Shown: positions 27,516-44,280 of the stretch, piece by piece
Numbering within the stretch: position 1 is the first letter of the stretch
Layout of the letters: every line of letters starts with the position of its first letter
Virus record (IMG/VR): IMGVR_UViG_3300032268_000986
Location: 124,001-188,000 of that record
Direction: 5' to 3' (one strand)
DNA length: 64,000 bases
The notes under the pieces: model-generated
Told to the model about the DNA's origin: nothing
Databases searched by the model: none
Seen by the model: only the letters and a program-made list of their open reading frames with translations
Position numbers and translations under genes: made by a program

Positions 27516-28627
27516 GATTCTGTTATCCTGTATATGATCCAGTGGGCACAGCATTTGGTGTGCATCGTCAGGCACACTGGGATTGTGATTTGACCACAGA
27601 CCTAGATCTAGTATCACAGCAGCCATTTCGTGTGGCCACAGTGCCAGTATTTTTTAACAGTGAGACATTTTGGCCCGGGATCAACTTATTAAAGATCAAT
27701 CCTGACCTGGCCGCAGTGAGGTTAGATGAATTTGATCTAGTACTGGTTCATGATGTAGAATGTTGCCGTTGGCCAGATGTTGAAGACTGGTTGCAGTCAG
27801 TGGGCATTGTGCGTTATCTATTTGTGGCCAATAATTTAACAGCCACGAGAAATTTGCCCAGTGAGAAATTCTTTTTTAAACCGCATTGGATGATCAAAAC
27901 AGTAGACGACAATCTATCTGTGCCAACCAACCAGTCTGGTGATAAACCATACATGTTTGAAGCCATGATGGGAGCTCGACGGCCGCACCGTGACTACATC
28001 ATGTTGGCCATGACTTGCAGTGGACAACTTGAACATAACATAGTCAACTATCGTGGATTTCCCGGCGGATCTACAGATGTTCACACCGAGGAGTTTCAAA
28101 ACATTTTTCCTGGCACACAGTTGAATTTTCCCTATATCAGTCCCAAGTATGATCCTGCCTGGGAACCAGTCAGCACCGTGCTCAGTAGCAATATCAGTTT
28201 TCCAGTGCCATCGGGAATCTATCAGAAAACACATTATAGCATAGTGCCCGAATCCCAGTACACTGGAGACACATTCTTTGCCACAGAAAAGACCGCCAAG
28301 GTATTGTTGGCACAACGACTGGCAGTGTGGTTTGCTCCTGAAAACTTTTTGCAAAATCTTCGCAGCCTGGGGTTTGAAACGTTTGGAGATGTCATAGACG
28401 AAAGCTATGATCAAGATGACTATCATCGTGATTGGAAACGATTTGAACGTGCCTGGCACACTGTAGAGCACATGGCCAGGTTTGAAGATCCTGTGTTGCT
28501 GTATCAAAAGCTACGCCCAAGACTGGAACACAATCGCAATCACATGCTGACCTTGGAACAACGCACACTGGCAGCTTGGCAACAGCGCCTGCAGGAATTG
28601 ATTCCTGCCGAACACTGGTCAGTTTAA
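27512..28627 (+). CDS. Putative glycosyltransferase-like protein
   Basis: YSIVPES...FATEKTAK...LRSLGFETF resembles the C-terminal motif of GT10-like GT-B proteins. Confidence 0.45.
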   Translation: MRFCYPVYDPVGTAFGVHRQAHWDCDLTTDLDLVSQQPFRVATVPVFFNSETFWPGINLLKINPDLAAVRLDEFDLVLVHDVECCRWPDVEDWLQSVGIVRYLFVANNLTATRNLPSEKFFFKPHWMIKTVDDNLSVPTNQSGDKPYMFEAMMGARRPHRDYIMLAMTCSGQLEHNIVNYRGFPGGSTDVHTEEFQNIFPGTQLNFPYISPKYDPAWEPVSTVLSSNISFPVPSGIYQKTHYSIVPESQYTGDTFFATEKTAKVLLAQRLAVWFAPENFLQNLRSLGFETFGDVIDESYDQDDYHRDWKRFERAWHTVEHMARFEDPVLLYQKLRPRLEHNRNHMLTLEQRTLAAWQQRLQELIPAEHWSV

Positions 28628-29446
28628 ACCAAAGTCATCACGCATTCTCTGCAGGAAGTTTTCGGCAATTTCCACCTGCCCCGATGGTGCCATGTGATAG
28701 CCGGGATCTTGGCCCACATGTTCGTGACGAGCACTGATGGGCAAGTAACTTTGTTTTTCATTCAACATGATGTTGCGGTCTGGAATCATAGAGGGGAATG
28801 CCGTACGCCACTGTGTTTGGTTGGCAGGATCAAACGGCCACAGCAGTATGGGAACCACTATGAAATTGATACCATCTAGATGCAGTTGCATGATGCCTTC
28901 GCGAATGATCCACTCGTCTTGTTGCTTCTTCCAGTCTGAATCATACAGGTTGTTGATGTAGTGCTTGACCGCAGTCTGCGCATCGTGACTGATTTTTTGT
29001 GACCTGTATTGGTGTGGATAGTTTTCAGCCAAGCTGAAAATGGTTTCACAAATCATGCGATAGGGATTGTTGCCATAGTTGACATTGTCAATGCCAGCTG
29101 CTCGATCGTATCCATTTTTCAATTGGGTATTCTGTAGGTGACGCTGTAGGTCTGAACCTCTGCCGCCCCAACCTCTGCCTTTGTCTTCACTATCACTGGG
29201 TTGATACGGAGCCGCTGAAGCAGGTATTTCCATTCTGTCCCAGAACGTGGGAGTGATTATTGCAAAGTCTGGACGCTGGCGTCTTATTTCTTCTATCTGC
29301 ACACGCACACCACCGTTGCTGCACCCCTGACGTGCTAGATTAACAAGGTTCCAGCCCAAGCGTTGAGACATGACTTCGCTCCAGGCTGTGCCGGGCAGGG
29401 TTTGACTGGGTGCTGAATAACTACAGCCTGCTACCATTAACTTCAT
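28619..29446 (-). CDS. SGNH/GDSL hydrolase-like protein
   Basis: VAGCSYS (block I), NLARQGCSN (block II), DPGYH (block V-like). Confidence 0.6.
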   Translation of the reverse strand: MKLMVAGCSYSAPSQTLPGTAWSEVMSQRLGWNLVNLARQGCSNGGVRVQIEEIRRQRPDFAIITPTFWDRMEIPASAAPYQPSDSEDKGRGWGGRGSDLQRHLQNTQLKNGYDRAAGIDNVNYGNNPYRMICETIFSLAENYPHQYRSQKISHDAQTAVKHYINNLYDSDWKKQQDEWIIREGIMQLHLDGINFIVVPILLWPFDPANQTQWRTAFPSMIPDRNIMLNEKQSYLPISARHEHVGQDPGYHMAPSGQVEIAENFLQRMRDDFGLN

Positions 29447-29988
29447 TAGTGATCCTTGAGAAATTCTTTGACTGATGTGGGGATGGTGTACTCGTTGATG
29501 TGTCCCAGACTGTGAAAACCAGCCACAATGTCCTTGTGCATGGGCAGTTCGCTGGAATCATACACGCCCGGGGGAATTACAAAACGATTTGTTCCTTGTC
29601 CGTGTGGTGCAAATGTTGCCAAGTTTGAGTGATTGGCCACTGCGTCATGCACCAAGCGATGGTGTATGTGTCCGTAATCACCTTCAGCATCATGAGTCAA
29701 CACAAGATCAAATCCTTGGGCCAGGTCATACATGCGTCTTTGTGCTTCGGTACTGCTCCAACGAGTGAACTGTTGTTGTTGCTGATCTGCATAGTCATCT
29801 TCAAATCCCAGGAACACTGTTTTGATCCCACGTCGACGCCAAAATGCAGCAACTTCACTGCCGCGTGGACTGGTTTCAGTATAGGTCAAATAACCAATGG
29901 TCCAGTCCAGTCGCTGATAGCGATGGATAAAACTGTATCCAAATATCACACAATCATCAGGATGTGCAACTAGGCATAGTGCTTTCAT
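29446..29988 (-). CDS. PIG-L/LmbE-family deacetylase
   Basis: VAHPDD and LTHDAEGDYGHIHH metal-binding motifs. Confidence 0.82.
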   Translation of the reverse strand: MKALCLVAHPDDCVIFGYSFIHRYQRLDWTIGYLTYTETSPRGSEVAAFWRRRGIKTVFLGFEDDYADQQQQQFTRWSSTEAQRRMYDLAQGFDLVLTHDAEGDYGHIHHRLVHDAVANHSNLATFAPHGQGTNRFVIPPGVYDSSELPMHKDIVAGFHSLGHINEYTIPTSVKEFLKDH

Positions 29989-30806
29989 TTGATTCCCTTT
30001 GTAACTAAAAAGTCTAGGTAACATTGTTGACGTTCACTGTCAAGATTTGACCAGGCATTGCGATGCACACTCACAGTCATGCTGTTTTGCATTTCTGTAA
30101 ACTTGCGATCAAATGATTCAACTTCACTGTGACACACATTGCACACCGGAACCGATTGAATCTGTGTGTTGTACAGTGTGTCAAAGTTGCCATGCATGGC
30201 ATGCACAAATCCCGAATACAAAATAAATTCAGTCAGTCGACCGTGAGCTTGAAACCACTGTGGGAACACCTGACCAGACTGTGTTTCCACAGCAGCAATC
30301 ATGGCTCTAGCTGTGGCATTGTGTACAAAGAACGGCACCCCACCGGGACCAATCTGTTGTGGTAGATCAATCTTGAAAAAATCATTTACAATACTGCGAC
30401 TGGCCTCAAACACTGGATAGATGTCCAGTGTGCCTACCTGCACTCGACCGTGCTGATCAAACAACTTGGCTAACTCAAGCTCATGTACAAATATGGTCTT
30501 GGCATCCAAGACCATGCTCCAGGTGTTGTAGCTCATGCCCGATGCCATGAGCTTGATGGCTTGTTGACTTACCCAACCAGTGGTGTGAAACGAGGTAGAG
30601 AATGCGCTGGCAGGTACAATTCGAACCCTGGACTGCATGCTGCCCCACCAAGCAGTGTCAATTTCTTGAGCCACTGCGTCGTCATCATTTACAAACACAT
30701 AGATGCTGCTGGCACCAATGTTCCGACAGTAGAGGTCAAGGCTCTGAGCCTGCCGACGCAGCACATCAAGCTCGTCTCGAAAAACCACAGTAACAATATC
30801 AATCAT
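29985..30806 (-). CDS. GT-A-like protein (DUF6492-like)
   Basis: GWVSQQAIKL, VLDAKT; paralog of 26637..27515. Confidence 0.55.
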   Translation of the reverse strand: MIDIVTVVFRDELDVLRRQAQSLDLYCRNIGASSIYVFVNDDDAVAQEIDTAWWGSMQSRVRIVPASAFSTSFHTTGWVSQQAIKLMASGMSYNTWSMVLDAKTIFVHELELAKLFDQHGRVQVGTLDIYPVFEASRSIVNDFFKIDLPQQIGPGGVPFFVHNATARAMIAAVETQSGQVFPQWFQAHGRLTEFILYSGFVHAMHGNFDTLYNTQIQSVPVCNVCHSEVESFDRKFTEMQNSMTVSVHRNAWSNLDSERQQCYLDFLVTKGIK

Positions 30807-31204
30807 GCAGTATGTATGAGGTCAAACAGTGGGCCAGCGTGAAATTCTCCTGACTGGGCCGTGATGCCTTGAGACAAATCAGCATGATTAAGTGGTACAA
30901 TATGTGTTTCCACTGGGACGTCACCCTGTAACTGCATCAAGGCCAACATGCGGTGCCGCCCATTGTGTGCAATCACTGCGGGAGGATCTTGGTTGTCAAG
31001 ATACAACACAGGATATCCAATTCCGGGATAAACCAGTCTGTGCTTGATCCAGTCAATGGTGTTCTGTTCTTGTGCGGTAAGCTCAATTGGCCGGCACAAC
31101 GATAGAAATACTGTAGGGCGCATGCTCACCAACAAACGATGCGTATCTGCAGGTAAATGAGCAGCTCCTATACCATAGTCGTTGTTGATGGTGTACGTGG
31201 TCAT
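30803..31204 (-). CDS. ParB/Srx-like domain protein
   Basis: VIAHNGRHRMLAL resembles the DGxHR motif. Confidence 0.5.
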   Translation of the reverse strand: MTTYTINNDYGIGAAHLPADTHRLLVSMRPTVFLSLCRPIELTAQEQNTIDWIKHRLVYPGIGYPVLYLDNQDPPAVIAHNGRHRMLALMQLQGDVPVETHIVPLNHADLSQGITAQSGEFHAGPLFDLIHTA

Positions 31205-32646
31205 TTGTTACGACCCGACTTCATGTTGGCGCACCAGTGATACATGCGGGCCTTCTCACCTGATGCACGTTTGGCACGGGCACGTAGGTCAGTAACTGAT
31301 CCGTCGCAGCTGGCACCTGCCCGTTTCACACGGCCCGGGCGACTCTTGCCTTGGACTTTGCCGTCTGCAAAGTTTTCATTCAAGCCATTTAATTCTTGTT
31401 CACCTTGAGGTGTTAGAAACCAGAACCCGTCACCTGGTGTAACAATCAAGCCGGCATTTTCTAAACTGTCGTATACATTTTGTTGTGCATCAGTTATACC
31501 ACGTATGTCTTGTTGAAAATCCAATCCATGGTTGTTGGCTACATCAATTGCTTTCATTAATAGTAATTTACCGTAACCTTGTCCTTGCCAGCGTGATTCA
31601 ACTTCTGCTTCATTGTTGACGTCATCTGTGTCAGCACTGCGTACAAAATTGAAATACCCTACATGTTTTCCATGCACTGCTAGTGTGATTTGAAAACTGT
31701 GTTTATATCCGTCAGGTGAAGTGACTGTGAATTTTACAGGGTTTCCGCCATCTGCAAAGTTTTCTGCCACAGCTGGTTGTACTCTACTCAATTCATATAT
31801 AACTAAATCGCCAGTGTCTGCACGAAAAGCTCTATAACCCCAGGCCCGAGCATAACGTTGAACCAGTCTGTCATACAACTTGGCACGACTTTCAGGATTT
31901 GGTTGAGGCTGGTCAGGCTCATAATATATTGTTGGGTCAGTTGCTTTACTGGCTGAAAAACTCAATCTTGAAGGTTTGTATTTTTTAATGTACTTTTGTA
32001 TGGAAGCCAACACTGTGGCAAAGATTCTCTGGGCATCGCCTTCGCCAGTGACTTCTTGACTGTTGTTTCTATAAAATTCAACCTGCACTATTTCTTTGCC
32101 CTCGTCATCTTGTTGATTGTTGAACATGATGCTTAAATTTGTTCCGTCGGGCAATTTGGCCAACATATCAACATCACCATACTCACTTTTTTCTGATTTG
32201 GTTTTGTAGGGGTTGTTGAAAGCTTCTGGCACAGGTTCCCAGGCCATGTTTTTACTGCCCTTGACCGCAGGCCGGAATCCCTGTGATCGATAGAACTTCA
32301 TCAGTTTGCTTTGACTGACTTGGCCCTTGTCCCAGGGGTATAATGTGAGTGCAATGTTATCTTCTTGTGCCAGACGTTGCAGTTCCCGCATGGCACGTGA
32401 TCCAACTCCGGCACGCAGGGGATAGGCCTGGAACCATTTGACTTCCACTGCGTCACGTTTGCTGTTGCTGGGTGTGAGTTCAAACATGGCAAACTGTTGA
32501 TCCTCGCCTGAACCGCCCATGGGCATGACATGATTGTTTTGCCAGGTCTGTGGATATGCTGCATAGACTTTTTGAATCCAGTCATATGCTCGTTGCTGTG
32601 GACTCAGCTTGATTGTGTTGTCAACAATGAATTCCTGTGCTCTCAT
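31201..32646 (-). CDS. Modular protein with two GNAT acetyltransferase-like domains and a basic C-terminal module
   Basis: MRAQEF start; AGVGSRAM..KFYRSQGF (GNAT 1); VESRWQGQGYGKLLL (GNAT 2); duplicated ENFADG. Confidence 0.75.
   Translation of the reverse strand: MRAQEFIVDNTIKLSPQQRAYDWIQKVYAAYPQTWQNNHVMPMGGSGEDQQFAMFELTPSNSKRDAVEVKWFQAYPLRAGVGSRAMRELQRLAQEDNIALTLYPWDKGQVSQSKLMKFYRSQGFRPAVKGSKNMAWEPVPEAFNNPYKTKSEKSEYGDVDMLAKLPDGTNLSIMFNNQQDDEGKEIVQVEFYRNNSQEVTGEGDAQRIFATVLASIQKYIKKYKPSRLSFSASKATDPTIYYEPDQPQPNPESRAKLYDRLVQRYARAWGYRAFRADTGDLVIYELSRVQPAVAENFADGGNPVKFTVTSPDGYKHSFQITLAVHGKHVGYFNFVRSADTDDVNNEAEVESRWQGQGYGKLLLMKAIDVANNHGLDFQQDIRGITDAQQNVYDSLENAGLIVTPGDGFWFLTPQGEQELNGLNENFADGKVQGKSRPGRVKRAGASCDGSVTDLRARAKRASGEKARMYHWCANMKSGRNK
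31364..31764. repeat. 14-bp direct repeat TCTGCAAAGTTTTC flanking the second GNAT module
   Basis: Exact copies at 31364-31377 and 31751-31764. Confidence 0.9.
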
Positions 32647-32650
32647 AAAA

Positions 32651-35600
32651 CTATTTAACTACGCCTTCGTCTAGCTCGTCTTCGGTCATGATTGGCACAA
32701 CAGACATTTCTGTGCCGTATGCATAACCGTTGTTCTGCATCCACTGAGTGGCCACACGATTTGCATCACGTTGCTGATTACCAATACCTGAGAATCTATA
32801 CAACTCATTACCATCAGCATCTAGAATCTGCCAAGCACCGGAGAATGTGCCCGGAGTGGCTCGTTGCTGTGCCAAGGCTGCTGTGCTTCCAGGGTAGACC
32901 ACCTCTATATCTGGTTCAATGTCAATGATACCATTTTGAGAAGAATCTTGACCAGTCTGACGAGTTCTCACTTCAAACTCATTGGGATTGTGTCCGTTTT
33001 GGCTTAGCCAAGTTCGTGCTTCGGATTCTGCATTGCGTCGGTACGTGCTGGGCGGGTTGAAGTAAACTTGATTGTTGCTTCTGCTGGCCACTTCCCAGGG
33101 CCCAGGACCGGTGGGTCTCAGCGGGTTAGTATCTGTCTGAGTGTTGGTCACACCGGGGCCACGCCGCATGCCAAATGTTCTTATAGCATCCTGAGTGTTC
33201 AATCTATGCGGCCCGTGCGCACGATAATCATCTAGGCGAATCTGAGCTTCGTCATCGTTGCGTAGCTGTGCAGTGTCAACTACCGCACCAGTTTCTCTAT
33301 TGTAGATTTCGTAATCAACACTGGTGTCCACACCTTGTGGCTCTGGTGCAGCAGGTTCAATCTCTTGAACTGTTAATTCAAGATCATTTCCAGGGTTCCT
33401 TATGTTGTAATCCTGTATCCAGGCTCGAGCAGCGGCCTGGTCTCTAAATCGTCTAGTCACAGACTCGCCGTCAACATTCATTGTTGCAAAGCGATCAAGC
33501 ACTGCTACCCAAATACCCCAATTGCCAGTTGGTGTGCTGTCTTGTTCTTCAGCTGGGCGAATGGGCTGAGCCTGCCAGCCTTTGTCTCTAAACCATTCTT
33601 GTTCAGTGGCACCGCCGGTGTTCAAATTCCATTGTTGTCGGGCTTGTTGCATGGCTTCAAATTTACTAGAAGCAATGACCTCTATGCCTTGACTTTGATA
33701 TGGAGAATCACTTGCACCAGTGACCTTCCATACAAATGGTCTATCCAAACTTTTATTATCAACAGGCTCTTCATACGGACGCACTGGCTTGGCCACAACT
33801 GATTGTCTGGTGTTGGCCCAGCTGGGATAGCCATCTGCACCCAAGGCTTTTTCAATGGCTTCTTCTTTAGTGGTGGCAACAACTTCTATACCGGCTAGAC
33901 TTTGCGGGGGATTTGTCACGCTCCACCACATTTTTTTACCGCTAGTCGCGCCGCGTTTGACCTGTCGTGTCAGCTGAGCCTGCTTGACAAAACTGCGCAG
34001 GGCTGCCTTGGGAATCTTGCCGGCTACGTATTCGGAAAAATATCTTATAGTGTCAGCGTCATCCTTGTTGTTTTCAGTCAACAGCTTGTACAGCTTCTTG
34101 AGGTATTCTTCTCTGTATGCTGCAGGATTCAAGGCAGCACTCATGGCCACTGTGAATCGCAACAGGGTGTTTTCAATTTGATCAAAGTTTTCGTCCAGCC
34201 AGTCGCCACCAGGTGAGCGGAATTCAATGTGCCCGTCCTTGGTATTGATTGATGTGTACTTGCTGGTCACACCCGAGTGTATGGCCTTGGAAGCCAGGCT
34301 GTCCAAGTTGCCTTTCATTTTTTCCAGCAGTTGTTGAGCCGAGTCTGGATCGTTGCGCACCTTGCCCTTGACCATGTCCAGGGCAGACTTGGCATAGGTG
34401 TTGCCAGCTCGGCCAAACAGATCCAGCACATATTTGTCGCCCATCAGCAGGGCCAGTTTTACAAAGTCCAGATTCTCTCTGCTGTAGCCCGGCACTGAAA
34501 TATTGATGTGCAGGCCTGTGGAGTCATTGGTATAGCAGCCATATTCCTTGGCCCAGGCCTTGACCTTGTTCAAGTCGCTGAGTATTTCGTCAATGGGCAA
34601 GGGCGGGCTCACAAACTCCAGGCCAGTGTCGCCAGGATTATCGCCATCCAAGCTGCCGTCTGGTTCCACAATATAGTGTTGTGATGTTGGGCTAGGACGC
34701 GGTACTCGTCCTGAATGATAGCTGCCACTGGCCTTGGTGTCACGACCAATGGCGTTTTCAAACTCCTGTGCCACATCTTCAATGCTGGCTTCGCCACCGC
34801 CTACAGTGGTCCAGTACGGCCAAGAAATCTCATAGGCATTTTCTACACCGCTCATGCGATCCAAGTCTTCGGCATCCAGCCAGTCGCTTTCGTCGTAACT
34901 TTCAAAATTTTCTTCACGGAACTCTTCAAAAGCATCACTACTGCCGGGGTCGATATGCAGGTTGGCAATGTATACCTCTAGTGCTTCCTCACGAGCTTCG
35001 CCCTCCAAGCCGTCGGGATTCCACTCAGATTCGTCTACATTGTTGGGCACCCATTCTTCTAGGAATTCTTCGCCACTGCGTTCCCAGTCTCGATAGAGTT
35101 TGTCATCCAGCCATTCCTGGAAATCATTCTGCATTCTTTCACGCAGGCGTTCTACTTCTCTACGACCATTGTAGTCACCATCATGGAAGAAGGCCACAGC
35201 ATCATCAATGCTGCGGCAGCGTTCGTCTTGGTCATAGTCTGGCTCCAGATCACCGTCATCATCGTTTTCGGTGTTGGGCACAATCATTTCAAATTCCATG
35301 CCGGCAATGGCGCCGGTACGGGCAGCTTCCTGCCGCAGGCTTGACGGACTCATGTTGATCTCACCCAGGAACTCATCTTCCAACAAGGCAAATTCCCAAT
35401 GTAGGTCATTGGCAAGCTCTTCACGCAGGTTGGCAGTCTTCATCAACAGTGCCGGGCGGCCTTGACTGTCAGTGTCCAAGGCCAGCTTGTTGGCTTCTCG
35501 GCCCACTTGTCCAGGCTTGATATCCACAGTCAAGGCCATGCTGTAGCGCGGGTCACGTGCTTCTTTTTTGTTTCGGGGAATGTAGCCCGATGCACTTTCT

Positions 35601-36772
35601 TTGATGGGTGCATCATCAAACTGTTCAGGATGTGCGACGGCCCAGTCACGCATGATAATGCCGGCTCTAGCATTGGCATCGTTTTCCCAGCGTGATCCAG
35701 TTTCTCCTGCGTCTGCAGGCAAGGGGCGAGTCTGATGCTGGGCGCAGTGTACCAGTTCATGTGCCACGGTACGCAGTACATCCAGTATGTGTCGATTTGT
35801 CAAGCTCACATTCAGCGTGTGTGCTTCAGGATCGTAGCGACCAAAGCTGTGATTGCTGGTGCCCCAGTCAGGGTCAGTGTGCAACACCACACGTGGTAAA
35901 GGATCAATATCTAACCGGTTGGCCACATGTTGTATAAAATCATTGATAGTGTCTGGATCCAAGTCATCTTCACAGAACATCTTGGTACTGGGGCTGACAC
36001 CGTCGGGCGTGGATCCTGCATCTTCAGCAAAGCCATAACGGAAACGCTGACGCGGCTTGTTTTGTTCACGCAGACTCAGCTCATGATCACGAGCAGCAGT
36101 TCTAGCATCACGCAAGGCCTTGATGCAGCCCTTGGTTCTTAGAATTTTAAAAACAATGTTTTCGCAGCCAAACTCACCATGCTGGTCCAGCCCACTCTGG
36201 CGCATGTTTCTAATCTTGTCCCATAGCCGGCCCATGGCATCTGCATCACCCGACTGAATGGCGCTGTGAATGCGAGCGTCTAGGTCTTCTACCTTGGCTC
36301 GCACACAGGTGTCATCAATACGAGCACGTTTTTTACGTGGTACTTGTATCCAACGGTCATTCATGACCGAGTATTCGCCTTGGCTTACCGGAGCTTCGGC
36401 AGCATTTTGCACATAGAGTTCAACTGGTATCTTGCCAATGGACAATGTGTGTTCGTCATTGTACTGATATTTCTTGGCGTTGAACAGTTCTTGATACACA
36501 TCATCCTGGCTGGGAAAATCCACCACAAGATGTAGATCAATATCTGACTGCGGAGTATAACTGAAAGCAGCATTGCTGCCGCTCACAGTTATGTCTTTTA
36601 CCTGTAGGTCAGATACACCTAGAAACTCCCGAAAATCAGCAGCAATTTCCAGGAGTTTGTCACGTACCTCGGGCAACATGTTTTCATCTCGTGCCCAAAT
36701 CACAGGATTGAGACGATTGTGAAATTTTACTGCGTCGGTTAATTTAAAAGAATCCAGCTCATGAATGTTCAT
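32651..36772 (-). CDS. 1373-aa multidomain protein: Pol-beta-like nucleotidyltransferase, HExxH module, amidoligase-like domain, C-terminal repeats
   Basis: SGSNA..SDIDLH; AHELVH; GMEFE, EPDGSL, GLEFVSPP, STGLHINIS, KYTSIN, IEFRSPGG. Confidence 0.8.
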   Translation of the reverse strand: MNIHELDSFKLTDAVKFHNRLNPVIWARDENMLPEVRDKLLEIAADFREFLGVSDLQVKDITVSGSNAAFSYTPQSDIDLHLVVDFPSQDDVYQELFNAKKYQYNDEHTLSIGKIPVELYVQNAAEAPVSQGEYSVMNDRWIQVPRKKRARIDDTCVRAKVEDLDARIHSAIQSGDADAMGRLWDKIRNMRQSGLDQHGEFGCENIVFKILRTKGCIKALRDARTAARDHELSLREQNKPRQRFRYGFAEDAGSTPDGVSPSTKMFCEDDLDPDTINDFIQHVANRLDIDPLPRVVLHTDPDWGTSNHSFGRYDPEAHTLNVSLTNRHILDVLRTVAHELVHCAQHQTRPLPADAGETGSRWENDANARAGIIMRDWAVAHPEQFDDAPIKESASGYIPRNKKEARDPRYSMALTVDIKPGQVGREANKLALDTDSQGRPALLMKTANLREELANDLHWEFALLEDEFLGEINMSPSSLRQEAARTGAIAGMEFEMIVPNTENDDDGDLEPDYDQDERCRSIDDAVAFFHDGDYNGRREVERLRERMQNDFQEWLDDKLYRDWERSGEEFLEEWVPNNVDESEWNPDGLEGEAREEALEVYIANLHIDPGSSDAFEEFREENFESYDESDWLDAEDLDRMSGVENAYEISWPYWTTVGGGEASIEDVAQEFENAIGRDTKASGSYHSGRVPRPSPTSQHYIVEPDGSLDGDNPGDTGLEFVSPPLPIDEILSDLNKVKAWAKEYGCYTNDSTGLHINISVPGYSRENLDFVKLALLMGDKYVLDLFGRAGNTYAKSALDMVKGKVRNDPDSAQQLLEKMKGNLDSLASKAIHSGVTSKYTSINTKDGHIEFRSPGGDWLDENFDQIENTLLRFTVAMSAALNPAAYREEYLKKLYKLLTENNKDDADTIRYFSEYVAGKIPKAALRSFVKQAQLTRQVKRGATSGKKMWWSVTNPPQSLAGIEVVATTKEEAIEKALGADGYPSWANTRQSVVAKPVRPYEEPVDNKSLDRPFVWKVTGASDSPYQSQGIEVIASSKFEAMQQARQQWNLNTGGATEQEWFRDKGWQAQPIRPAEEQDSTPTGNWGIWVAVLDRFATMNVDGESVTRRFRDQAAARAWIQDYNIRNPGNDLELTVQEIEPAAPEPQGVDTSVDYEIYNRETGAVVDTAQLRNDDEAQIRLDDYRAHGPHRLNTQDAIRTFGMRRGPGVTNTQTDTNPLRPTGPGPWEVASRSNNQVYFNPPSTYRRNAESEARTWLSQNGHNPNEFEVRTRQTGQDSSQNGIIDIEPDIEVVYPGSTAALAQQRATPGTFSGAWQILDADGNELYRFSGIGNQQRDANRVATQWMQNNGYAYGTEMSVVPIMTEDELDEGVVK

Positions 36773-36787
36773 GGCTGTATTTAGCTT

Positions 36788-37720
36788 TTATTCTGGAGCA
36801 ACCGTGCTTTGTTCCACGGGCTCGATGTTGCTGGCAATCACAGTGGCTTCGGGTTCAACATTGAGTTGTTCCGGAGCAATATCATGTCCACCTTGTGGAA
36901 CCATGCCAGCGACGTCGGCTGCAGGTGCAGAATTCACGGGCGAAAACACCGCGGCAAGATCTTGGTACAGTTTTTCTTGTGTGGTGCCATCAAACACATA
37001 GGTACCAGTGTGGCGCAACAGCACACGCTTGTCTACCCAGACTTGTCCGCCAAGGTCACGCCAGTTTTCACAGAATGTCCAGTCTTCCGAGTAGTAGCGA
37101 TTTTCACGCACTGCTGTGTCAAAATAGGTTTTCATGTACTGATTCAAACTGGCATCTAGGCCAATGTCATTGTTGAAATGACGCACAGCAGGATGGCTGT
37201 TGAGCTTTTCAAACACTTCACGCTTCATCAACAAGAAGCCTGTGCCAGTCTTGGTGACTTCGATCAAGGGATTGTCGGGCGTCTCTACAAATCCAGGAAG
37301 TCCGTTCACACACCATTTCACTGGCAGGCTCTTCATGGGATACAAGCCGCCAATCACGTCTTTTTGTGCATCCAACAGCACCAACACATGCCAGGGTTCC
37401 CAGCCAATGTCTGCGTCAATAAACATCAAGTGTGTGCTGCCTTCAGTGGCCAAGAACTTGGCAGTGAGTGTGTTTCTAGCACGGCTGATCAAGCTCTCGT
37501 TGGTCATGGTTTCCACGGTCCAATCCAGCCCCAGTTGACGGGCTGTGTTGGCCCACTTGATAAAACTCATAAAAGTCTGCTCAGTGAGTTGACCACCATA
37601 ACAAGGCATACAGAAGTGTACTCTTGTGGTTTTTAAATAGTCAAGGTTTACTTGAATATTGGTCTGGTTGGTCTGTTGTGTGTCGCTTGGGGGCGTAGTA
37701 GTGGGTTGGGCGTCTGCCAT
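36788..37720 (-). CDS. GT-A fold glycosyltransferase-like protein
   Basis: FCMPCYGG, ESLISRARN, THLMFIDADIGW, TGFLL, SEDWTFC. Confidence 0.75.
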   Translation of the reverse strand: MADAQPTTTPPSDTQQTNQTNIQVNLDYLKTTRVHFCMPCYGGQLTEQTFMSFIKWANTARQLGLDWTVETMTNESLISRARNTLTAKFLATEGSTHLMFIDADIGWEPWHVLVLLDAQKDVIGGLYPMKSLPVKWCVNGLPGFVETPDNPLIEVTKTGTGFLLMKREVFEKLNSHPAVRHFNNDIGLDASLNQYMKTYFDTAVRENRYYSEDWTFCENWRDLGGQVWVDKRVLLRHTGTYVFDGTTQEKLYQDLAAVFSPVNSAPAADVAGMVPQGGHDIAPEQLNVEPEATVIASNIEPVEQSTVAPE

Positions 37721-37783: not shown

Positions 37784-38362
37784 CTATTTGACGCCAATGA
37801 TCATGAAACGAGTATATGCAGTTTCAGGATCTTCAAGAGATAGGCTGCCTGAATACAATATCTGACTCAAGGGAAATTGTTGTTGAATATCTTTTGCACT
37901 GAAAAACGGGTTCTCTTCCACATGGTCACGTGCCTGCATGGCCACTAGTGTTCCCGGAGGAATATTCTGAAACCAGTCACTGCCCGCTATGTCGGTCAGG
38001 CTCAGATTGATCACACTGCCTTGGCCGTCCAGTTGTTGGTAGTCAAGACCATTGGCGTCTTTGCGCATGTGTTCAACGCCCTGATATCCCAGTTGATCCA
38101 GCATGGTTTTACCTGTGAACAAACGTTCACTGTTGGTTTCTACATTGATTATCTTGTCTACCTCCAGGGCAGACTGGCGTCTTATCAGCAGAGCCAGGTT
38201 ACTGTACCAAGACCCCAGCACATACATCACAGAAACATAATCGGTAATCTTGGACAACTCCTGGATCAACCACAACTTGCTGAATACCAGGTCTGGTGTA
38301 AAACTACCACTGAAGCTGTAGCCTGAGCTTTCGGCCAGGCCCACTACATCTTCCACAATCAT
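37784..38362 (-). CDS. Class I methyltransferase-like protein with capsid-targeting-like N-terminus
   Basis: VMYVLGSWYS (motif I variant), INVE, TRFMIIG; begins MIVEDVVGLAE. Confidence 0.6.
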   Translation of the reverse strand: MIVEDVVGLAESSGYSFSGSFTPDLVFSKLWLIQELSKITDYVSVMYVLGSWYSNLALLIRRQSALEVDKIINVETNSERLFTGKTMLDQLGYQGVEHMRKDANGLDYQQLDGQGSVINLSLTDIAGSDWFQNIPPGTLVAMQARDHVEENPFFSAKDIQQQFPLSQILYSGSLSLEDPETAYTRFMIIGVK

Positions 38363-39918
38363 TTTTTACGACCCTGACAGTGAGCTCGCTGACTGAATCC
38401 CCGGGGACTGGCGCAGTTGATTGAACTTTTGTATTTTTGACTCCACTTTTCATCAATGTAGTCTTCGTCCACGGGCTGATTTTCTCTACGTTGATAGCTG
38501 GCAGTCATGCCACCCACAAAGTTTTGTGCATCAACTTCGGTCATGTCAGGCTTGTCCATCAGGGGACCACCTGTGACCCAGGCATCGCAGGTTCTGCGAC
38601 TGGCACATTTGAACTTTAGAAACTTGCAGTATCCCAGGTCGCCGGCGTCAATCACACCTTCTGCATCTGCAGGCGAGTCAGCATCAATACCTTGCGCAAT
38701 GCAGTCCAAGGTGTCTTGGCGTATGTCAAATGCCGCACAGTTGCCGCACAGGCTTTGTTTTGCTTCTTCTGCACTGTCAAGATTCCACTCGTCAACTTTT
38801 TTCATCCAGAACTTGCGGTTGGACATGTCTGGGTTGAGTGGGCCATATCCGTATTCGTCAATGGCTTTTTGTCTGTTCTTGAGATTCAGTGTGATGTCCT
38901 GTGTGGCAGGCGGACACTTCTTTTCAGCCTCCGCCACACCTTGTGATTCAAAATTATCTATATTTCTAGAAACTCTACGCTCACTGCCTTGAGCAGGGAA
39001 TCCTGAACTTTGTGATTGCGGCGCAGGTCTTCCTGGGGCATACTTAGATAACTTTTCAGTGGCTTTTTCTCTAGCAATAGTCATCCACATTTGTTGTTGT
39101 CTGCGATCAATAGGCTGGCCACGTGTGGCAACTATTTGTTCATAGATTGCTCGTGCCATTTCCTCTATGTCTTTATTGTGTTGCACACGAGGATCATCTT
39201 GACGCATGTTTTGGAATTCTCTTGAAACATCAACAGGACGTGATTGTGCTATTGCAGATCCAGCTGCACCTGCCACAGCCGCCGCACCTAGTCCACGTAA
39301 GAATCCTCTACGGCTCAAGTCTTCGTCAAGTTCACCGCCAATGGCTGTGTCCAACAGTTTGACAACCGTGGCAGCTAGTCGGGGATTGGTTTGTGTCTTG
39401 GGATACAAGCTCATTACCAGAGCTGTTTTGCGTTGATCATTTAACCGGGGCCAGGCAGCGCGAATTTCTGTGGCCGATGTCATTCCGGGACCAAATTCCA
39501 CAGTGGGCAAGTAGGCCATGTAGGCATGCCGGGCAAATGGTTCTAGTCGGCGAGCACCCATGAGTGGTTGCAGGTATGCAGGTGATCCGTCTTTTTTTAC
39601 ACCACCGGCCTGGGGTGGTTTGTTGGCGTCTTTTTCACTGCGTACAAAGATCAGTCGATCCTGTGCAGGGTCAAATTGAGCAGTGATTTCCTCGGCACGA
39701 AATGGTGATTTGACCTGCACAAAATGTCCAGGCTCAACTCCAGCCAACTTGGCCAGTTTTTCTTTTACAGCAAATGGAAATGGTCTAGCCGATGTGTCAT
39801 TTGTGGCTGCCACAAATACTTTGGCGTCGGGAAATGCTCTGCGGGCAGAGTTGTAAAGGGCTGCATGGCCAGCATGAAAAGGGTGAAACCCACCCGGTAT
39901 AATAACAACGGTAGTCAT
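38359..39918 (-). CDS. Modular protein: HxGH nucleotidyltransferase-like domain, internal Tat-signal module, Cys-rich module, basic C-terminal peptide
   Basis: GGFHPFHAGH; LDE-DLSRRGFLRGLGAAAVAGAAGSAIA; SQGVAE; CGNC...CKFLKFKC..C; KWSQKYKSSINC. Confidence 0.8.
   Translation of the reverse strand: MTTVVIIPGGFHPFHAGHAALYNSARRAFPDAKVFVAATNDTSARPFPFAVKEKLAKLAGVEPGHFVQVKSPFRAEEITAQFDPAQDRLIFVRSEKDANKPPQAGGVKKDGSPAYLQPLMGARRLEPFARHAYMAYLPTVEFGPGMTSATEIRAAWPRLNDQRKTALVMSLYPKTQTNPRLAATVVKLLDTAIGGELDEDLSRRGFLRGLGAAAVAGAAGSAIAQSRPVDVSREFQNMRQDDPRVQHNKDIEEMARAIYEQIVATRGQPIDRRQQQMWMTIAREKATEKLSKYAPGRPAPQSQSSGFPAQGSERRVSRNIDNFESQGVAEAEKKCPPATQDITLNLKNRQKAIDEYGYGPLNPDMSNRKFWMKKVDEWNLDSAEEAKQSLCGNCAAFDIRQDTLDCIAQGIDADSPADAEGVIDAGDLGYCKFLKFKCASRRTCDAWVTGGPLMDKPDMTEVDAQNFVGGMTASYQRRENQPVDEDYIDEKWSQKYKSSINCASPRGFSQRAHCQGRKK
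38928..38942. repeat. GVAE cassette-boundary repeat (variant copy)
   Basis: CCTCCGCCACACCTT shares 13 nt with the 16-mer at 49493, 55816, 56608 and 57217. Confidence 0.8.
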
Positions 39919-40469: not shown

Positions 40470-41135
40470 TTATTTAGCCTGTATTGGTAGTGTTTTTCTA
40501 ATGATCCCGGGAGACACTAGATTCAACATTTGAATGTCACGCACATCGTCATGATCAATAAAAAAGTGACTCTGCACATAAACATGCCGGGATGCGGCGA
40601 GCCGCTCGCGAAACCCCGGGGTCAAACGATAGCAATCGCCTCGATTCAGCAGAAATCTTCGCAGTGCATGCCCTTGCTCTTGCTCCAGCATGCGACCACG
40701 GAAATAACTGCGATACCGGTGTTGTGGTTTTTCCAGTATCACAACATCTCGGGGCAATGCTACCCGAGCTCGAGTACCGTTTCCGTCTGGCTGTGCAGCC
40801 ACCAGCCGGTCAAGATCTGCTAGACTGTTGGTGTACACGTACATCCAGTCACTGTAGAAAATACGCTTGTGGGGTTCTTCAAATGCCGCCAACACATCAC
40901 ACATGTCGTGCAATCGTGCCACCCAGTTGTCATCAATGACTCTAGCCGGGTTTGACCAGCTGTATTTCAACAGTAGAGTGTTTGTTGCACCAACGGCGGT
41001 ACTCACAGCTTCATGGGTGAGAGTGTGCAAGCACCTGGCTCCACGCATGGCAAAGTTGTAGCCAAATTCGTACTGATCATAGAACAGCCGATCTCGCACA
41101 CGATCTTCAAATGTTGTCAAGTCTAATGATGCCAT
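40470..41135 (-). CDS. Hypothetical protein
   Basis: 221-aa ORF following clpA. Confidence 0.7.
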   Translation of the reverse strand: MASLDLTTFEDRVRDRLFYDQYEFGYNFAMRGARCLHTLTHEAVSTAVGATNTLLLKYSWSNPARVIDDNWVARLHDMCDVLAAFEEPHKRIFYSDWMYVYTNSLADLDRLVAAQPDGNGTRARVALPRDVVILEKPQHRYRSYFRGRMLEQEQGHALRRFLLNRGDCYRLTPGFRERLAASRHVYVQSHFFIDHDDVRDIQMLNLVSPGIIRKTLPIQAK

Positions 41136-43371: not shown

Positions 43372-43427
43372 ATGGTTCCTTGAAATACTTTCAATAATTT
43401 TAACACACTGGCCTGGCTGATGCAACC

Positions 43428-44228
43428 TTATTGGCAGTGTTCCTTGATGGCCTGTGTCACAGCGTCGGGCACATGATCGGGTATGTATGCTGTCAGGCGC
43501 AGCATGAGATCGCCACGACCTGTGCCAGAATCTTGCAGTCCACGCTGTCGCAGCCGCATCACAGTTCCAGGTTGGCTGGCAGCAGGTATGTTGATGGTCA
43601 GTTCATTGCCCAAAAAATCACTCAGGTCAACATCGCCGCCTGTGATCAATTTCCAGATTGAAATCCTAAAATCAGTGTGCAAGTTCAAACCATCTCGGCG
43701 CCACGCAGGATCGGGCTGCACTCGATACTGCACCACAAGGTCTTGTCCCCCGGGCGCTACACCACTGTATTGTACATTGTCCCCGTCCTGGATACCACGG
43801 GGCACTGAAATTTCCACAGTGGTGGTACCGGCACTGCTGCCAATGGACACACGTCGAGTGGATCCCAGTGCAACATCACGCAACTGTATAGTGACCGACA
43901 TGCGAACATGACTGCGTCGAGGCTGTGCGCCACCGGGAAATCCTCCAGTGAATCCACCCTGACGAAACATGCTGAACAAGTCATTGATGTCCACTCCAGC
44001 CGGGTGAAACCCACCACCCCCGCCGCCCTGGAATGGCGAGGGATTGTCATAGGCTGCTCGTTTGTTGGGATCACTCAGGGTGTCATAGGCTACCTGAATT
44101 TCTTGAAATCGAGCTGTGTCGCCACCTTTGTCGGGATGATGCTGGCTGGCCAGTCGACGGAAAGCACGTTTGATTTCATCGGCAGCAGCGGTTCGAGCAA
44201 CTCCTAGAGTTGCATAGTGATCGGTCAT
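43428..44228 (-). CDS. DnaJ/CbpA-type co-chaperone (no Zn finger)
   Basis: J-domain with HPD (HHPDKGG), G/F-rich linker, C-terminal GDL domain. Confidence 0.92.
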   Translation of the reverse strand: MTDHYATLGVARTAAADEIKRAFRRLASQHHPDKGGDTARFQEIQVAYDTLSDPNKRAAYDNPSPFQGGGGGGFHPAGVDINDLFSMFRQGGFTGGFPGGAQPRRSHVRMSVTIQLRDVALGSTRRVSIGSSAGTTTVEISVPRGIQDGDNVQYSGVAPGGQDLVVQYRVQPDPAWRRDGLNLHTDFRISIWKLITGGDVDLSDFLGNELTINIPAASQPGTVMRLRQRGLQDSGTGRGDLMLRLTAYIPDHVPDAVTQAIKEHCQ

Positions 44229-44234
44229 AGAAAA

Positions 44235-44280
44235 GGTCCAGTACAACATTAATTATACTGGACCTGCGGATGATAATCAA
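44235..44280 (-). promoter_or_regulatory. Sigma70 promoter whose -10 box lies within a terminator-like inverted repeat
   Basis: TTGATT (44280-44275)-17-TATAAT (44257-44252); GGTCCAGTA/TACTGGACC stem followed by TTTT. Confidence 0.65.

What the first reader, a model, noticed from the sequence alone, without database searches (positions are those of the whole stretch)
32651..36772. 1373-aa fusion of nucleotidyltransferase, zincin-like and amidoligase-like domains
Seen: Pol-beta-type GS..DxD motif (aa ~60-75), HExxH (AHELVH), an amidoligase/glutamine-synthetase-like motif set interrupted by a very acidic insert, then duplicated C-terminal units (W.VT...GIEV.A..K.EA...A). Domains are separated by LRE, FAE, IKE and LGE sites. 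Established: T4 injects processed Alt to modify host proteins. Inference: a polyprotein of injected protein-modifying or second-messenger-related enzymes (AMPylation, peptide ligation, proteolysis).
Basis: partly seen in the sequence, partly recalled or inferred. Interest (0 to 1): 0.7.

Follow-up and report, generated by a model that had tools for sequence, protein, structure and literature searches.

The report
Modular jumbo-phage enzyme polyprotein
This 1373-residue gene of an uncultivated 343-kb freshwater phage strings together a nucleotidyltransferase, a zinc protease and an amide-bond ligase, joined by conserved 'aliphatic-x-Glu' junctions that look like cutting sites; relatives swap other enzymes in and out at the same junctions.

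Summary
Window 32651-36772 (-) is one intact 1373-aa ORF with these parts:
- a Pol-beta nucleotidyltransferase (aa 1-236);
- an IrrE/SprT-like gluzincin (aa 269-386; invariant H338, E339, H342, E363);
- a conserved, predicted-unstructured segment (aa 393-471);
- a glutamine-synthetase-like Amidoligase_2 domain (aa 472-940) with a conserved acidic helical insert (aa 498-655);
- six small beta-beta-alpha-beta units (aa 944-1366), not two.

It belongs to a very large metagenome-only family: 354 clusters at 50% identity match at E<=1e-30.

Relatives insert deaminase, GH19+LysM, GNAT, M48, ADP-ribosyltransferase or ParB modules at the same borders. Every border carries [LIVM]-x-E. All 8 internal twin-arginine export signals found sit within four residues (one or two in practice) after such a motif, against a 7.9% background. 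That argues for real cleavage into separate enzymes. P1-Glu specificity is that of T4-type prohead proteases.

In this phage the last cassette (GNAT modules plus a basic tail) is a separate 481-aa ORF, 4 nt downstream.

Packaging into the virion and injection are not shown. The gene lies more than 100 kb from the structural modules, and no prohead protease was found.

Verdict: a new variant of the 'polyvalent protein' theme.

The parts
32651..36772 (-). Whole ORF, 1373 aa (core subunit of the modular polyprotein)
36065..36772 (-). Pol-beta-type nucleotidyltransferase domain, aa 1-236 (G65-S66, D77-x-D79, E118 invariant)
   Evidence: Pfam PF01909 at 22.9 bits against a 21-bit cut-off when scanned alone. 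phrog_36119 at E 1.6e-42. Invariant residues in alignment A3. Stand-alone homologues occur in Maribacter, Synechococcus and Lak phages. Atlas clusters.
36536..36580 (-). NTase catalytic motif GS...DxD, aa 65-79
36064..36066 (-). E236 of the conserved L-x-E junction (aa 234-236), between the NTase domain and the linker
   Evidence: [LIVM]xE kept in 93% of 40 homologues; the sequence after it is variable
35615..35968 (-). IrrE/SprT-like gluzincin metallopeptidase core, aa 269-386 (H338, E339, H342, E363 invariant)
   Evidence: AF2 model with pLDDT 84-94. Foldseek against PDB returns PprI/IrrE, minigluzincins, Spartan, Wss1 and CapP. AFDB returns SprT-like, IrrE-like, M48 and DUF4157. BFVD returns phage IrrE N-terminal-like proteins at E 1e-9 to 1e-10. 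Invariant residues.
35360..35596 (-). Conserved but predicted-unstructured segment, aa 393-471. It is bounded by [LIVM]xE at aa 390-392 and 469-471, and 23 of its 79 positions are invariant.
   Evidence: no match in Pfam or the Atlas
33953..35359 (-). Glutamine-synthetase-like amidoligase (Amidoligase_2), aa 472-940
   Evidence: PF12224 at E 7.6e-7, 29.7 bits against a 22-bit cut-off. Foldseek against PDB returns glutamine synthetases and YbdK. All nearest ESM Atlas clusters are Amidoligase_2. Catalytic E, H and R residues invariant.
34808..35281 (-). Acidic helical insert inside the amidoligase, aa 498-655 (33% D+E, net charge -39), conserved in length and in many positions
32675..33943 (-). 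Six tandem beta-beta-alpha-beta units of ~55-60 aa, aa 944-1366; the last unit is near-invariant in the family
   Evidence: no Pfam or Atlas match; only 'beads-on-a-string' fold matches at low probability
31201..32646 (-). Downstream 481-aa ORF, the split-off terminal cassettes. It holds a weak GNAT-like module (aa 1-140), a DUF6934-like module (aa 141-295), a GNAT (aa 300-420) and a basic Cys-containing tail that starts with E-N-F-A-D-G (aa 423-481).
   Evidence: 80-88% identical to the C-terminal parts of fused homologues. Pfam GNAT. The same two-ORF layout is seen in two independent assemblies of the nearest relative and in other runs.
36788..37720 (-). Conserved upstream partner gene, 310 aa (phrog_1574, function unknown)
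38359..39918 (-). Neighbour with the same junction grammar: a cytidylyltransferase-like domain, then L-D-E followed by an internal Tat signal (aa ~200-225), then a basic Cys tail

Best explanation
The ORF encodes the constant core of a modular polyprotein made by a large clade of uncultivated freshwater jumbo myoviruses.

Shown:
- It contains three enzymes that keep all their catalytic residues: a Pol-beta nucleotidyltransferase, an IrrE/SprT-like zinc peptidase and an ATP-dependent glutamine-synthetase-like amidoligase.
- It also contains a conserved unstructured segment and six small linker-like domains.
- The parts are joined by [LIVM]-x-E junctions.
- Relatives add or swap other host-directed modules at exactly these junctions: cytidine/dCMP-type deaminase, GH19 lysozyme-like plus LysM, GNAT, M48 peptidase, ADP-ribosyltransferase and ParB.
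- In this phage the last cassette has become a separate gene 4 nt downstream.

Inferred:
- The precursor is cut after the Glu of each junction into separate enzymes.
- The released enzymes act on different host targets and compartments.
- Modules that begin with a Tat or signal-anchor-like sequence are exported to the periplasm once cleavage has exposed that sequence.

Which protease cuts: a P1-Glu, P3-aliphatic preference is what T4-type and giant-phage prohead proteases show. If that protease is responsible, the protein is loaded into proheads, processed there and delivered with the DNA, like the ejection proteins of phiKZ/SPN3US-type phages. Alternatively the built-in zincin does the cutting in the cytoplasm.

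Chemistry, inferred from the families only: the NTase transfers a nucleotide to a protein or small-molecule hydroxyl, and the amidoligase forms an amide bond between a carboxylate and an amine using ATP. The substrates are unknown.
For: Domains. Catalytic residues are invariant.

Family size and constant N-terminal architecture. In most representatives the zincin starts at about aa 236-245.

Variable cassettes: of 66 variable pieces scanned, 14 carry a deaminase, 13 GH19, 11 GNAT, 9 LysM, 6 DUF6934, 2 M48, 1 an ADP-ribosyltransferase and 1 ParB_N.

Fission and fusion of cassettes. An in-frame 849-nt cassette indel separates lake populations.

Junction grammar:
- Conserved [LIVM]xE at aa 234-236, 390-392 and 469-471, in linker regions.
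- 36 of 36 tail/GNAT module starts are preceded by [LIVM]xE, with a free middle residue.
- Inserted modules are flanked by such motifs.
- 8 of 8 internal Tat-like signals lie 1-2 residues behind one, against a 7.9% background.
- Those signals precede LysM+GH19 or M48 modules, which have periplasmic targets.
- The query ends 4 residues after the same L-D-E junction that precedes the GH19 cassette in its nearest relative.

Literature: giant-phage and T4 prohead proteases all cut after Glu (PMC5694885, PMC10052503). Polyvalent proteins with a zincin peptidase are predicted to be processed and delivered (PMC5512222).
Against: - No cleavage has been observed; the case is comparative only.
- The gene sits at 156.6-160.8 kb, more than 100 kb from the virion and baseplate genes (14-52 kb) and from the terminase and tail genes (300-340 kb). 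Its neighbours are DnaJ, ClpB, a DNA polymerase and small-molecule enzymes.
- The stand-alone NTase homologue of cyanophage S-CRM01 lies among early/DNA-metabolism genes.
- No T4-type prohead protease, portal or capsid gene could be recognised in the genome.
- The zincin does not reach any Pfam peptidase threshold.
- [LI]xE is not enriched within this single protein.
- Much of the junction conservation is shared ancestry, not independent events.
Confidence: 0.6

Rival explanations
1. The protein is an uncleaved multi-enzyme that works inside the infected cell. It would act as a scaffolded pathway: NTase activation plus amidoligase coupling, helped by the neighbouring PIG-L deacetylase, DUF6492, cytidylyltransferase-like and GNAT genes. 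The pathway would build or modify a small molecule, a cell-envelope component or the phage DNA (hypermodification).
For: - Synteny with DUF6492 and PIG-L genes is conserved in all relatives examined.
- Amidoligase genes co-occur with thymidine-hypermodification clusters in viral metagenomes (PMC8989533).
- The NTase family is fused elsewhere to cytidylyltransferase, PAP2, NUDIX and M23 domains.
- The location is non-structural.
- The genome carries several radical-SAM genes.
Against: - The variable cassettes (ADP-ribosyltransferase, deaminase, ParB, M48, GH19+LysM) do not form a coherent pathway.
- Internal Tat signals cannot work without cleavage.
- An invariant peptidase domain and conserved P3/P1 junction motifs have no role in an uncleaved enzyme.
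- No hydroxymethylase, kinase or aGPT-type hypermodification gene was seen next to the gene.
Confidence: 0.2
2. The polyprotein is cut by its own zincin in the cytoplasm after synthesis and is never packaged. The released modules act in the producing cell during middle or late infection (host takeover, envelope remodelling, and a contribution to lysis through exported GH19 or M48 modules).
For: - A zincin is present and invariant in every family member.
- The polyvalent-protein paper proposes such peptidases as the processing enzymes (PMC5512222).
- Tat/SAR-type export of a muramidase is what secreted endolysins do.
- The location is non-structural.
- No prohead protease was found.
Against: - Zincins usually select on P1', which here is variable (Q, S, N, I, V, D, G), whereas P1 is always Glu. 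This is own knowledge of peptidase specificity.
- Neighbours with the same grammar (the 519-aa and 633-aa ORFs) have no peptidase of their own.
- This rival overlaps the best explanation and differs only in which protease cuts and where.
Confidence: 0.15
3. The ORF is an assembly chimera or a chance open frame, and the domain string is not real.
For: It comes from a metagenome assembly. The source run may be the only one holding this exact sequence over its whole length.
Against: - More than 1500 homologues of the same order and length exist.
- Contigs at 99% identity from other samples span its parts and the junction to the next ORF without gaps.
- Independent assemblies of the nearest relative have the same layout.
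Confidence: 0.01

Closest known systems
Polyvalent proteins of phages and conjugative elements (Iyer, Burroughs, Anand, de Souza, Aravind 2017; PMC5512222)
   Same: - A large multi-domain protein of a mobile element built around a zincin-like metallopeptidase.
- Combinatorial shuffling of host-directed modules (GNAT, ADP-ribosyltransferase, lysozyme-type, ParB, NTase) together with uncharacterised linker domains.
- Processing into units is predicted.
   Different: - That survey does not mention amidoligases or jumbo phages.
[quoted passage not shown]
- The zincin here is IrrE-like and gives no match to the Pfam polyvalent-protein peptidase model.
- The gene is not next to virion genes.
- The explicit [LIVM]xE junction grammar and the unmasked Tat signals are not described there.
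Prohead-protease-processed ejection and internal proteins (T4 Alt and IPs; phiKZ and SPN3US ejection proteins)
   Same: - Candidate cleavage motif with Glu at P1 and a small or aliphatic residue at P3 (PMC5694885, PMC10052503).
- The cargo consists of host-modifying enzymes.
   Different: - In the studied phages, cleavage mostly removes N-terminal propeptides or targeting sequences. Here the motifs separate whole enzyme modules.
- Packaging is unproven, and the phage's protease has not been identified.
- This ORF has no ADP-ribosyltransferase domain.
Amidoligase_2 (PF12224) / glutamine synthetase-like carboxylate-amine ligases (GS, YbdK/GCS2, PafA)
   Same: Pfam match over threshold, the GS-type set of metal- and ATP-binding residues, and GS/YbdK fold matches.
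   Different: Carries a 158-residue acidic helical insert after the first strand and is embedded in a polyprotein; the substrate is unknown.
Stand-alone phage nucleotidyltransferases of phrog_36119 (Maribacter phages Molly/Colly, cyanophages S-CRM01 and S-B68, Lak megaphages)
   Same: 33-39% identity over aa 1-234, with the same motifs.
   Different: Those are single-domain proteins of ~230 aa, or are fused to other partners (M23, NUDIX, cytidylyltransferase, PAP2). None has a known function.
IrrE/ImmA (M78), SprT/Spartan and minigluzincin metallopeptidases
   Same: Same fold and the same H-E-x-x-H plus downstream Glu ligands. IrrE and ImmA are site-specific processing enzymes.
   Different: No sequence-level family membership. 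The known family members do not cut after Glu (own knowledge).
Polymorphic toxins (Rhs/CDI-type) and viral polyproteins
   Same: A constant N-terminal part with exchangeable C-terminal cassettes, as in polymorphic toxins; one precursor cut into several enzymes, as in viral polyproteins.
   Different: No immunity genes, secretion domains or toxin-type delivery parts were seen. Polyprotein strategies of this kind are not typical for tailed dsDNA phages.

Membership tests
Pol-beta nucleotidyltransferase superfamily (Pfam NTP_transf_2, PF01909) | hG[GS] motif followed by [DE]h[DE]h on the next strand | tested here: met
   G65-S66 and D77-I78-D79, invariant in 40 homologues
Pol-beta nucleotidyltransferase superfamily (Pfam NTP_transf_2, PF01909) | Score over the Pfam gathering threshold | tested here: inconclusive
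   22.9 bits against a 21-bit cut-off for the domain alone, but 19.6 bits for the whole protein. The profile search against PDB gave only a weak hit to a minimal NTase, 2rff, at E 0.34.
Pol-beta nucleotidyltransferase superfamily (Pfam NTP_transf_2, PF01909) | Pol-beta alpha/beta fold carrying a third carboxylate | not tested
E118 is invariant and is the likely third carboxylate, by inference only.
Zincin / gluzincin metallopeptidases (IrrE-, SprT-, minigluzincin-like) | H-E-x-x-H on the active-site helix plus a third ligand Glu on the following helix | tested here: met
   H338, E339, H342 and E363 are invariant in 50 sequences; the helices are at the expected places in the model
Zincin / gluzincin metallopeptidases (IrrE-, SprT-, minigluzincin-like) | Zincin fold | tested here: met
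   Top matches in PDB, AFDB and BFVD are all zincins, at probability ~1.0
Zincin / gluzincin metallopeptidases (IrrE-, SprT-, minigluzincin-like) | Sequence membership in a curated peptidase family (M78, SprT, M48, or the polyvalent-protein peptidase model) | tested here: not met
   Only sub-threshold Pfam hits (DUF6055 at E 0.015, eCIS_core at E 0.13); the profile search against PDB found nothing
Amidoligase_2 / glutamine-synthetase-like ligases | Pfam PF12224 over the gathering threshold | tested here: met
   27-29.7 bits against a 22-bit cut-off
Amidoligase_2 / glutamine-synthetase-like ligases | GS-type catalytic set (E-x-E strand, Glu strand, His, E-x-R) | tested here: met
   E493/E495, E719, H755 and E850/R852 are invariant. 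Assigning these residues to catalytic roles is my inference from GS.
Amidoligase_2 / glutamine-synthetase-like ligases | GS-like fold | tested here: met
   Glutamine synthetases and YbdK in PDB at weak E-values (~0.05), because the query model is multi-domain. All nine nearest Atlas cluster types are Amidoligase_2 or named amidoligase.
Polyvalent proteins (Iyer et al. 2017) | Large multi-domain protein of a phage or conjugative element that includes a zincin-like peptidase | tested here: met
Polyvalent proteins (Iyer et al. 2017) | Combinatorial variation of conflict-type domains among homologues | tested here: met
Polyvalent proteins (Iyer et al. 2017) | Gene context of virion or packaging genes (for the phage-type members) | tested here: not met
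   The nearest recognisable structural genes are more than 100 kb away. The neighbours are DnaJ, ClpB and small-molecule enzymes.
Polyvalent proteins (Iyer et al. 2017) | Physical delivery into the host with the DNA | not testable with these tools
   Needs virion proteomics of a cultured relative
Substrates of T4-type / giant-phage prohead proteases | Cleavage motif with Glu at P1 in exposed regions | tested here: met
   Conserved [LIVM]xE at all module borders. This shows the motif only, not cleavage.
Substrates of T4-type / giant-phage prohead proteases | A prohead protease of that family encoded by the same phage | tested here: inconclusive
   Pfam S77 gave no match even at E 10. T4 gp20, gp21 and gp23 found nothing by phmmer, while gp18 did. 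The head genes were simply not recognised, so absence is not shown.
T4 Alt-like injected ADP-ribosyltransferase | ADP-ribosyltransferase domain | tested here: not met
   None in this ORF; one relative, P0091, carries PF03496
cGAS/DncV-like or other second-messenger nucleotidyltransferases | Match to a CD-NTase or SMODS-type family | tested here: not met
   The Pfam scan at E<=10 lists only PF01909 and other weak hits, none of them a CD-NTase or SMODS-type family

The most novel reading that the evidence does not exclude
Main reading: the conserved, intrinsically unstructured ~60-80-residue segment (aa 393-471) would end in a C-terminal Glu once cut at the invariant L469-x-E471 junction. It lies directly in front of a glutamine-synthetase-like ligase. 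It could therefore be a phage-encoded Pup-like tag that the amidoligase conjugates to host (or phage) proteins through that Glu, as PafA does with Pup.

More modest reading: a protease-programmed cassette system in which capsid-processed effectors are re-routed to the periplasm by Tat signals that cleavage exposes. I rate this at about 0.3.
Probability: 0.05. Interest if true: 0.95.

Novelty: new variant of a known kind. Interest (0 to 1): 0.66.

Why it matters
- If the junction grammar marks real cleavage sites, these jumbo phages use a polyprotein strategy with exchangeable enzyme cassettes. That gives a simple sequence rule ([LIVM]-x-E borders) for dissecting hundreds of giant unannotated phage proteins into testable units.
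- It would also show that a phage can send parts of one precursor to the periplasm by exposing Tat or signal-anchor sequences through cleavage.
- The constant trio (NTase, zincin, amidoligase) is kept with intact active sites in hundreds of sequence clusters, yet has no known substrate. It is a good target for discovering a new host-modification chemistry.
- The family is abundant in lake metagenomes and has no cultured member.

Tried and rejected
- **DNA search against cultured phages:** a near-identity search found nothing. No cultured phage has the full architecture.
- **Zincin segment against PDB:** the profile search found nothing, so a structure model was needed.
- **Head genes:** Pfam Gp23 and Peptidase_S77, the Atu_ph07 portal, and T4 gp20/21/22/23/24 all failed to find head genes in the genome. 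Only the sheath matched. Three PHROG scans of 27 large ORFs found virion, baseplate, tail, terminase, SbcCD and late-sigma genes, but no capsid, portal or protease.
- **T4 late promoter:** TATAAATA is not enriched (9 seen on the two strands, ~15 expected), so timing of expression could not be inferred.
- **Complex prediction:** the conserved peptide with the amidoligase gave no answer (score 0.01). This is neither support nor evidence against.
- **Atlas and Pfam searches:** searches of the C-terminal units, the conserved peptide and the basic tail gave no lead.
- **Fold search for the repeats:** it matched only other tandem-domain proteins (CcmM, RRM arrays, protein G) at low probability, which I do not take as homology.
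- **GH19/LysM as entry-type virion lysins:** I first read the GH19/LysM cassettes of relatives this way. I now give that less weight, because these modules are preceded by Tat or signal-anchor-like sequences, which point to export from the cytoplasm.
- **Host assignment from MAG bins:** the hits (Haliscomenobacter, other Bacteroidota, Methylophilaceae, Burkholderiaceae) are inconsistent and are not used.

Full report
**What is there.** Window 32651-36772 on the minus strand is a single ATG-started ORF of 1373 codons. The window is bases 124001-188000 of a 342,865-bp IMG/VR virus record judged 99% complete. Its DNA polymerase is closest to those of the Phosso, Atu_ph07 and 121Q group of jumbo myoviruses, at 43-50% identity. 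It has a T4-like tail sheath and a gp55-like late sigma factor. Sequencing runs that hold the region are lake and freshwater metagenomes.

All of them are at the stated places.
- G65-S66 and D77-x-D79.
- A single H-E-L-V-H at aa 338-342.
- An acidic stretch at aa 498-655 (33% D+E, net charge -39).
- The two W-x-V-T ... G-I-E-V units at aa 944-1070.

**Domains.**
- *NTase, aa 1-236.* It matches phrog_36119 at E 1.6e-42. It reaches the Pfam NTP_transf_2 threshold when scanned alone (22.9 against 21 bits). The same ~230-aa domain exists as a stand-alone protein in Maribacter phages, T4-like cyanophages and Lak megaphages. Elsewhere it is fused to M23, NUDIX, cytidylyltransferase or PAP2 domains. 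G65, S66, D77, D79 and E118 are invariant.
- *Zincin, aa 269-386.* The AlphaFold model (pLDDT 84-94) has the zincin layout. Fold searches return only zincins:
  - PDB: PprI/IrrE, minigluzincins, Spartan, Wss1 and CapP.
  - AFDB: SprT-, IrrE-, M48- and DUF4157-type clusters.
  - BFVD: phage 'IrrE N-terminal-like' proteins at E 1e-9 to 1e-10.
  - H338, E339, H342 and E363 are invariant in 50 sequences. No curated sequence family is reached.
- *Amidoligase, aa 472-940.* It matches Amidoligase_2 above threshold. The model matches glutamine synthetases and YbdK, and all the nearest ESM Atlas clusters are amidoligases. The GS-type residues E493/E495, E719, H755 and E850/R852 are invariant.
- *Acidic 'insert'.* It is a conserved helical subdomain (pLDDT 80-90). 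The length of the whole segment varies only between 467 and 495 residues in 120 homologues.
- *C-terminal units, aa 944-1366.* These are six beta-beta-alpha-beta units of about 55-60 residues. They have no informative match.
- *Conserved segment, aa 393-471.* It is strongly conserved (23 invariant positions) but modelled without confidence. It has no match anywhere.

**The family.** The word-indexed search gave more than 1585 homologues of 1235-2076 aa, all from metagenomes. An exhaustive profile search with the zincin segment found 3727 representatives at E<=1e-3 and 354 at E<=1e-30. In most of these the zincin starts near residue 240, that is, behind the NTase. No cultured phage has the full architecture. 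Atu_ph07 and RsoM2USA have only a stand-alone amidoligase.

The first ~1000 residues are colinear across the family. Variable material sits at a few fixed points:
- after about aa 250;
- at aa 392/393;
- at aa 451-471;
- after about aa 1002;
- at the C-terminus.

A Pfam scan of 66 variable pieces found:

| Module | Pieces |
|---|---|
| Cytidine/dCMP deaminase | 14 |
| GH19 | 13 |
| GNAT | 11 |
| LysM | 9 |
| DUF6934 | 6 |
| M48 | 2 |
| ADP-ribosyltransferase | 1 |
| ParB_N | 1 |

.

**The next gene belongs to it.** The 481-aa ORF that starts 4 nt after the stop (TAG, then TTTT, then ATG) is 80-88% identical to the C-terminal parts of fused relatives such as P0045, P0037 and P0015.
- In the nearest relative the same 1325+482 layout is found in two independent assemblies.
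- In another close relative the big protein ends in GH19, and a 198-aa ORF carries only the GNAT and tail.
- Contigs from other lake samples span the junction without gaps.
- Two of those runs carry an in-frame 849-nt deletion inside the 481-aa gene. Cassettes are therefore gained and lost between closely related populations.
- Synteny is conserved: DnaJ, ClpB, several small ORFs, a 310-aa phrog_1574 protein, the polyprotein, a variable ORF, a 133-aa ORF, DUF6492, PIG-L.

**Junction grammar.**
- Within this one protein, [LI]xE is no more frequent than chance (16 against 12.8).
- The copies at the domain borders are conserved: aa 234-236 in 93%, aa 390-392 in 86%, and L469 invariant with E471 in >=90%. 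They lie in low-confidence linkers next to variable sequence.
In relatives it is followed by a ~70-residue insert flanked by V-x-E on both sides.
- All 36 occurrences of the N-F-[AH]-D-G motif that opens the tail or the GNAT cassette are preceded by [LIVM]-x-E. The middle residue varies freely (P, N, D, A, W, K, H, E).
- Inserted modules end in ...P-T-Y-N-V-x-E and are followed by further such motifs.
- After the last small unit the family reads V-V-P-I-M-T-E-D-E-L-D-E, and then the next cassette begins. The query stops four residues after that L-D-E. Its nearest relative continues there with an Ala/Gly-rich hydrophobic stretch and GH19.

**Internal export signals.** Eight internal twin-arginine signal peptides were found. 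Six are in family members. Two are in this window's own neighbours: the 519-aa ORF at 38359-39918 and the 633-aa ORF at 55650-57551. All eight begin one or two residues after an [LIVM]-x-E, against a background of 7.9% for such a motif within four residues. They precede LysM+GH19 or M48 modules, whose targets are periplasmic. A Tat signal works only at an N-terminus. This is therefore independent evidence that the precursor is cut after the Glu.

**Which protease, and where.**
- P1 Glu with a small or aliphatic P3 is the specificity of the prohead proteases of T4, phiKZ and SPN3US (PMC5694885, PMC10052503). That the T4 motif is L/I-x-E is from my own knowledge.
- If that enzyme cuts, the protein must enter proheads, and its pieces would be delivered with the DNA.
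- Against this, the gene lies more than 100 kb from every recognisable structural gene.
- The stand-alone NTase of S-CRM01 sits among early genes.
- I could not identify the phage's capsid, portal or protease genes.
- The built-in zincin is the other candidate, but zincins do not usually select on P1.
- I therefore regard processing as likely (about 0.6-0.7) and virion delivery as open (about 0.35).

**Comparison with what is known.** The closest concept is the polyvalent protein.
- Met: a large multi-domain protein of a phage, a zincin peptidase, and combinatorial conflict-type modules.
- Not met: the virion gene context and the specific peptidase family.
- The 2017 survey mentions neither amidoligases nor jumbo phages, and it found Pol-beta NTases only in conjugative elements.
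- No paper in the library describes this architecture.
- I rate it a new variant of a known kind. The junction grammar and the exposed export signals are its most interesting features.

**Limits.**
- Substrates of the NTase and the amidoligase are unknown.
- The complex prediction testing whether the conserved peptide docks on the amidoligase gave no answer.
- The host is unknown.
- An RNA library holds contigs of the gene, but that does not show transcription.

Noticed in passing
window 38359-39918 (-): This 519-aa ORF has a cytidylyltransferase-like N-terminal domain. At aa ~197-225 it reads L-D-E, followed by a textbook internal Tat signal (S-R-R-G-F-L-R plus an Ala/Gly-rich stretch ending A-x-A). 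It ends in a basic Cys-containing tail resembling that of the 481-aa ORF. It looks like a second small polyprotein with the same junction grammar.
   Followed up: partly
window 55650-57551 (-): This 633-aa ORF has no family match except an internal Tat signal at aa 319-339, directly behind L-E-E. It is a third candidate for cleavage-dependent export.
   Followed up: partly
window 31371-32225: Contigs from two other lake metagenome runs skip 853 nt here and insert 4 nt. That is an in-frame loss of 283 codons from the 481-aa ORF, so a cassette indel separates near-identical phage populations.
   Followed up: partly
window 31204-31389 (-), and the C-termini of 31 homologues: A conserved ~55-residue basic tail starts with E-N-F-A-D-G and ends with H-W-C-A-N-M-K-S-G. 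It closes many family members and has no Pfam match. It may bind DNA or target the protein somewhere; its function is unknown.
   Followed up: partly
window 41107-44249 (-): A ClpB-like double-AAA+ chaperone (772 aa; PHROGs calls it an ATP-dependent protease) and a DnaJ-like protein lie a few genes upstream. They are syntenic with the polyprotein in all relatives examined.
   Followed up: no
window 28619-31204 (-): A 133-aa ORF, a DUF6492 protein and a PIG-L-type deacetylase always follow the polyprotein locus in relatives. They may form a small-molecule or envelope-modifying set.
   Followed up: no
genome 27414-41786 (+), outside the window: A 4790-aa ORF sits inside the virion/baseplate module of the same phage. 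The genome also carries several radical-SAM genes and a 2226-aa ORF at 324756-331436.
   Followed up: no
window 34606-34610: Minority contigs in three runs carry a compensating +1/-1 indel pair 4 nt apart inside the acidic insert. This is a local two-codon difference between strains.
   Followed up: no
L014, L015 (Haliscomenobacter MAG contigs): Two contigs binned with a Haliscomenobacter MAG encode relatives of the amidoligase part (75% and 57% identity). Other hits fall in Bacteroidota, Methylophilaceae and Burkholderiaceae bins. This is a weak and inconsistent host hint.
   Followed up: no
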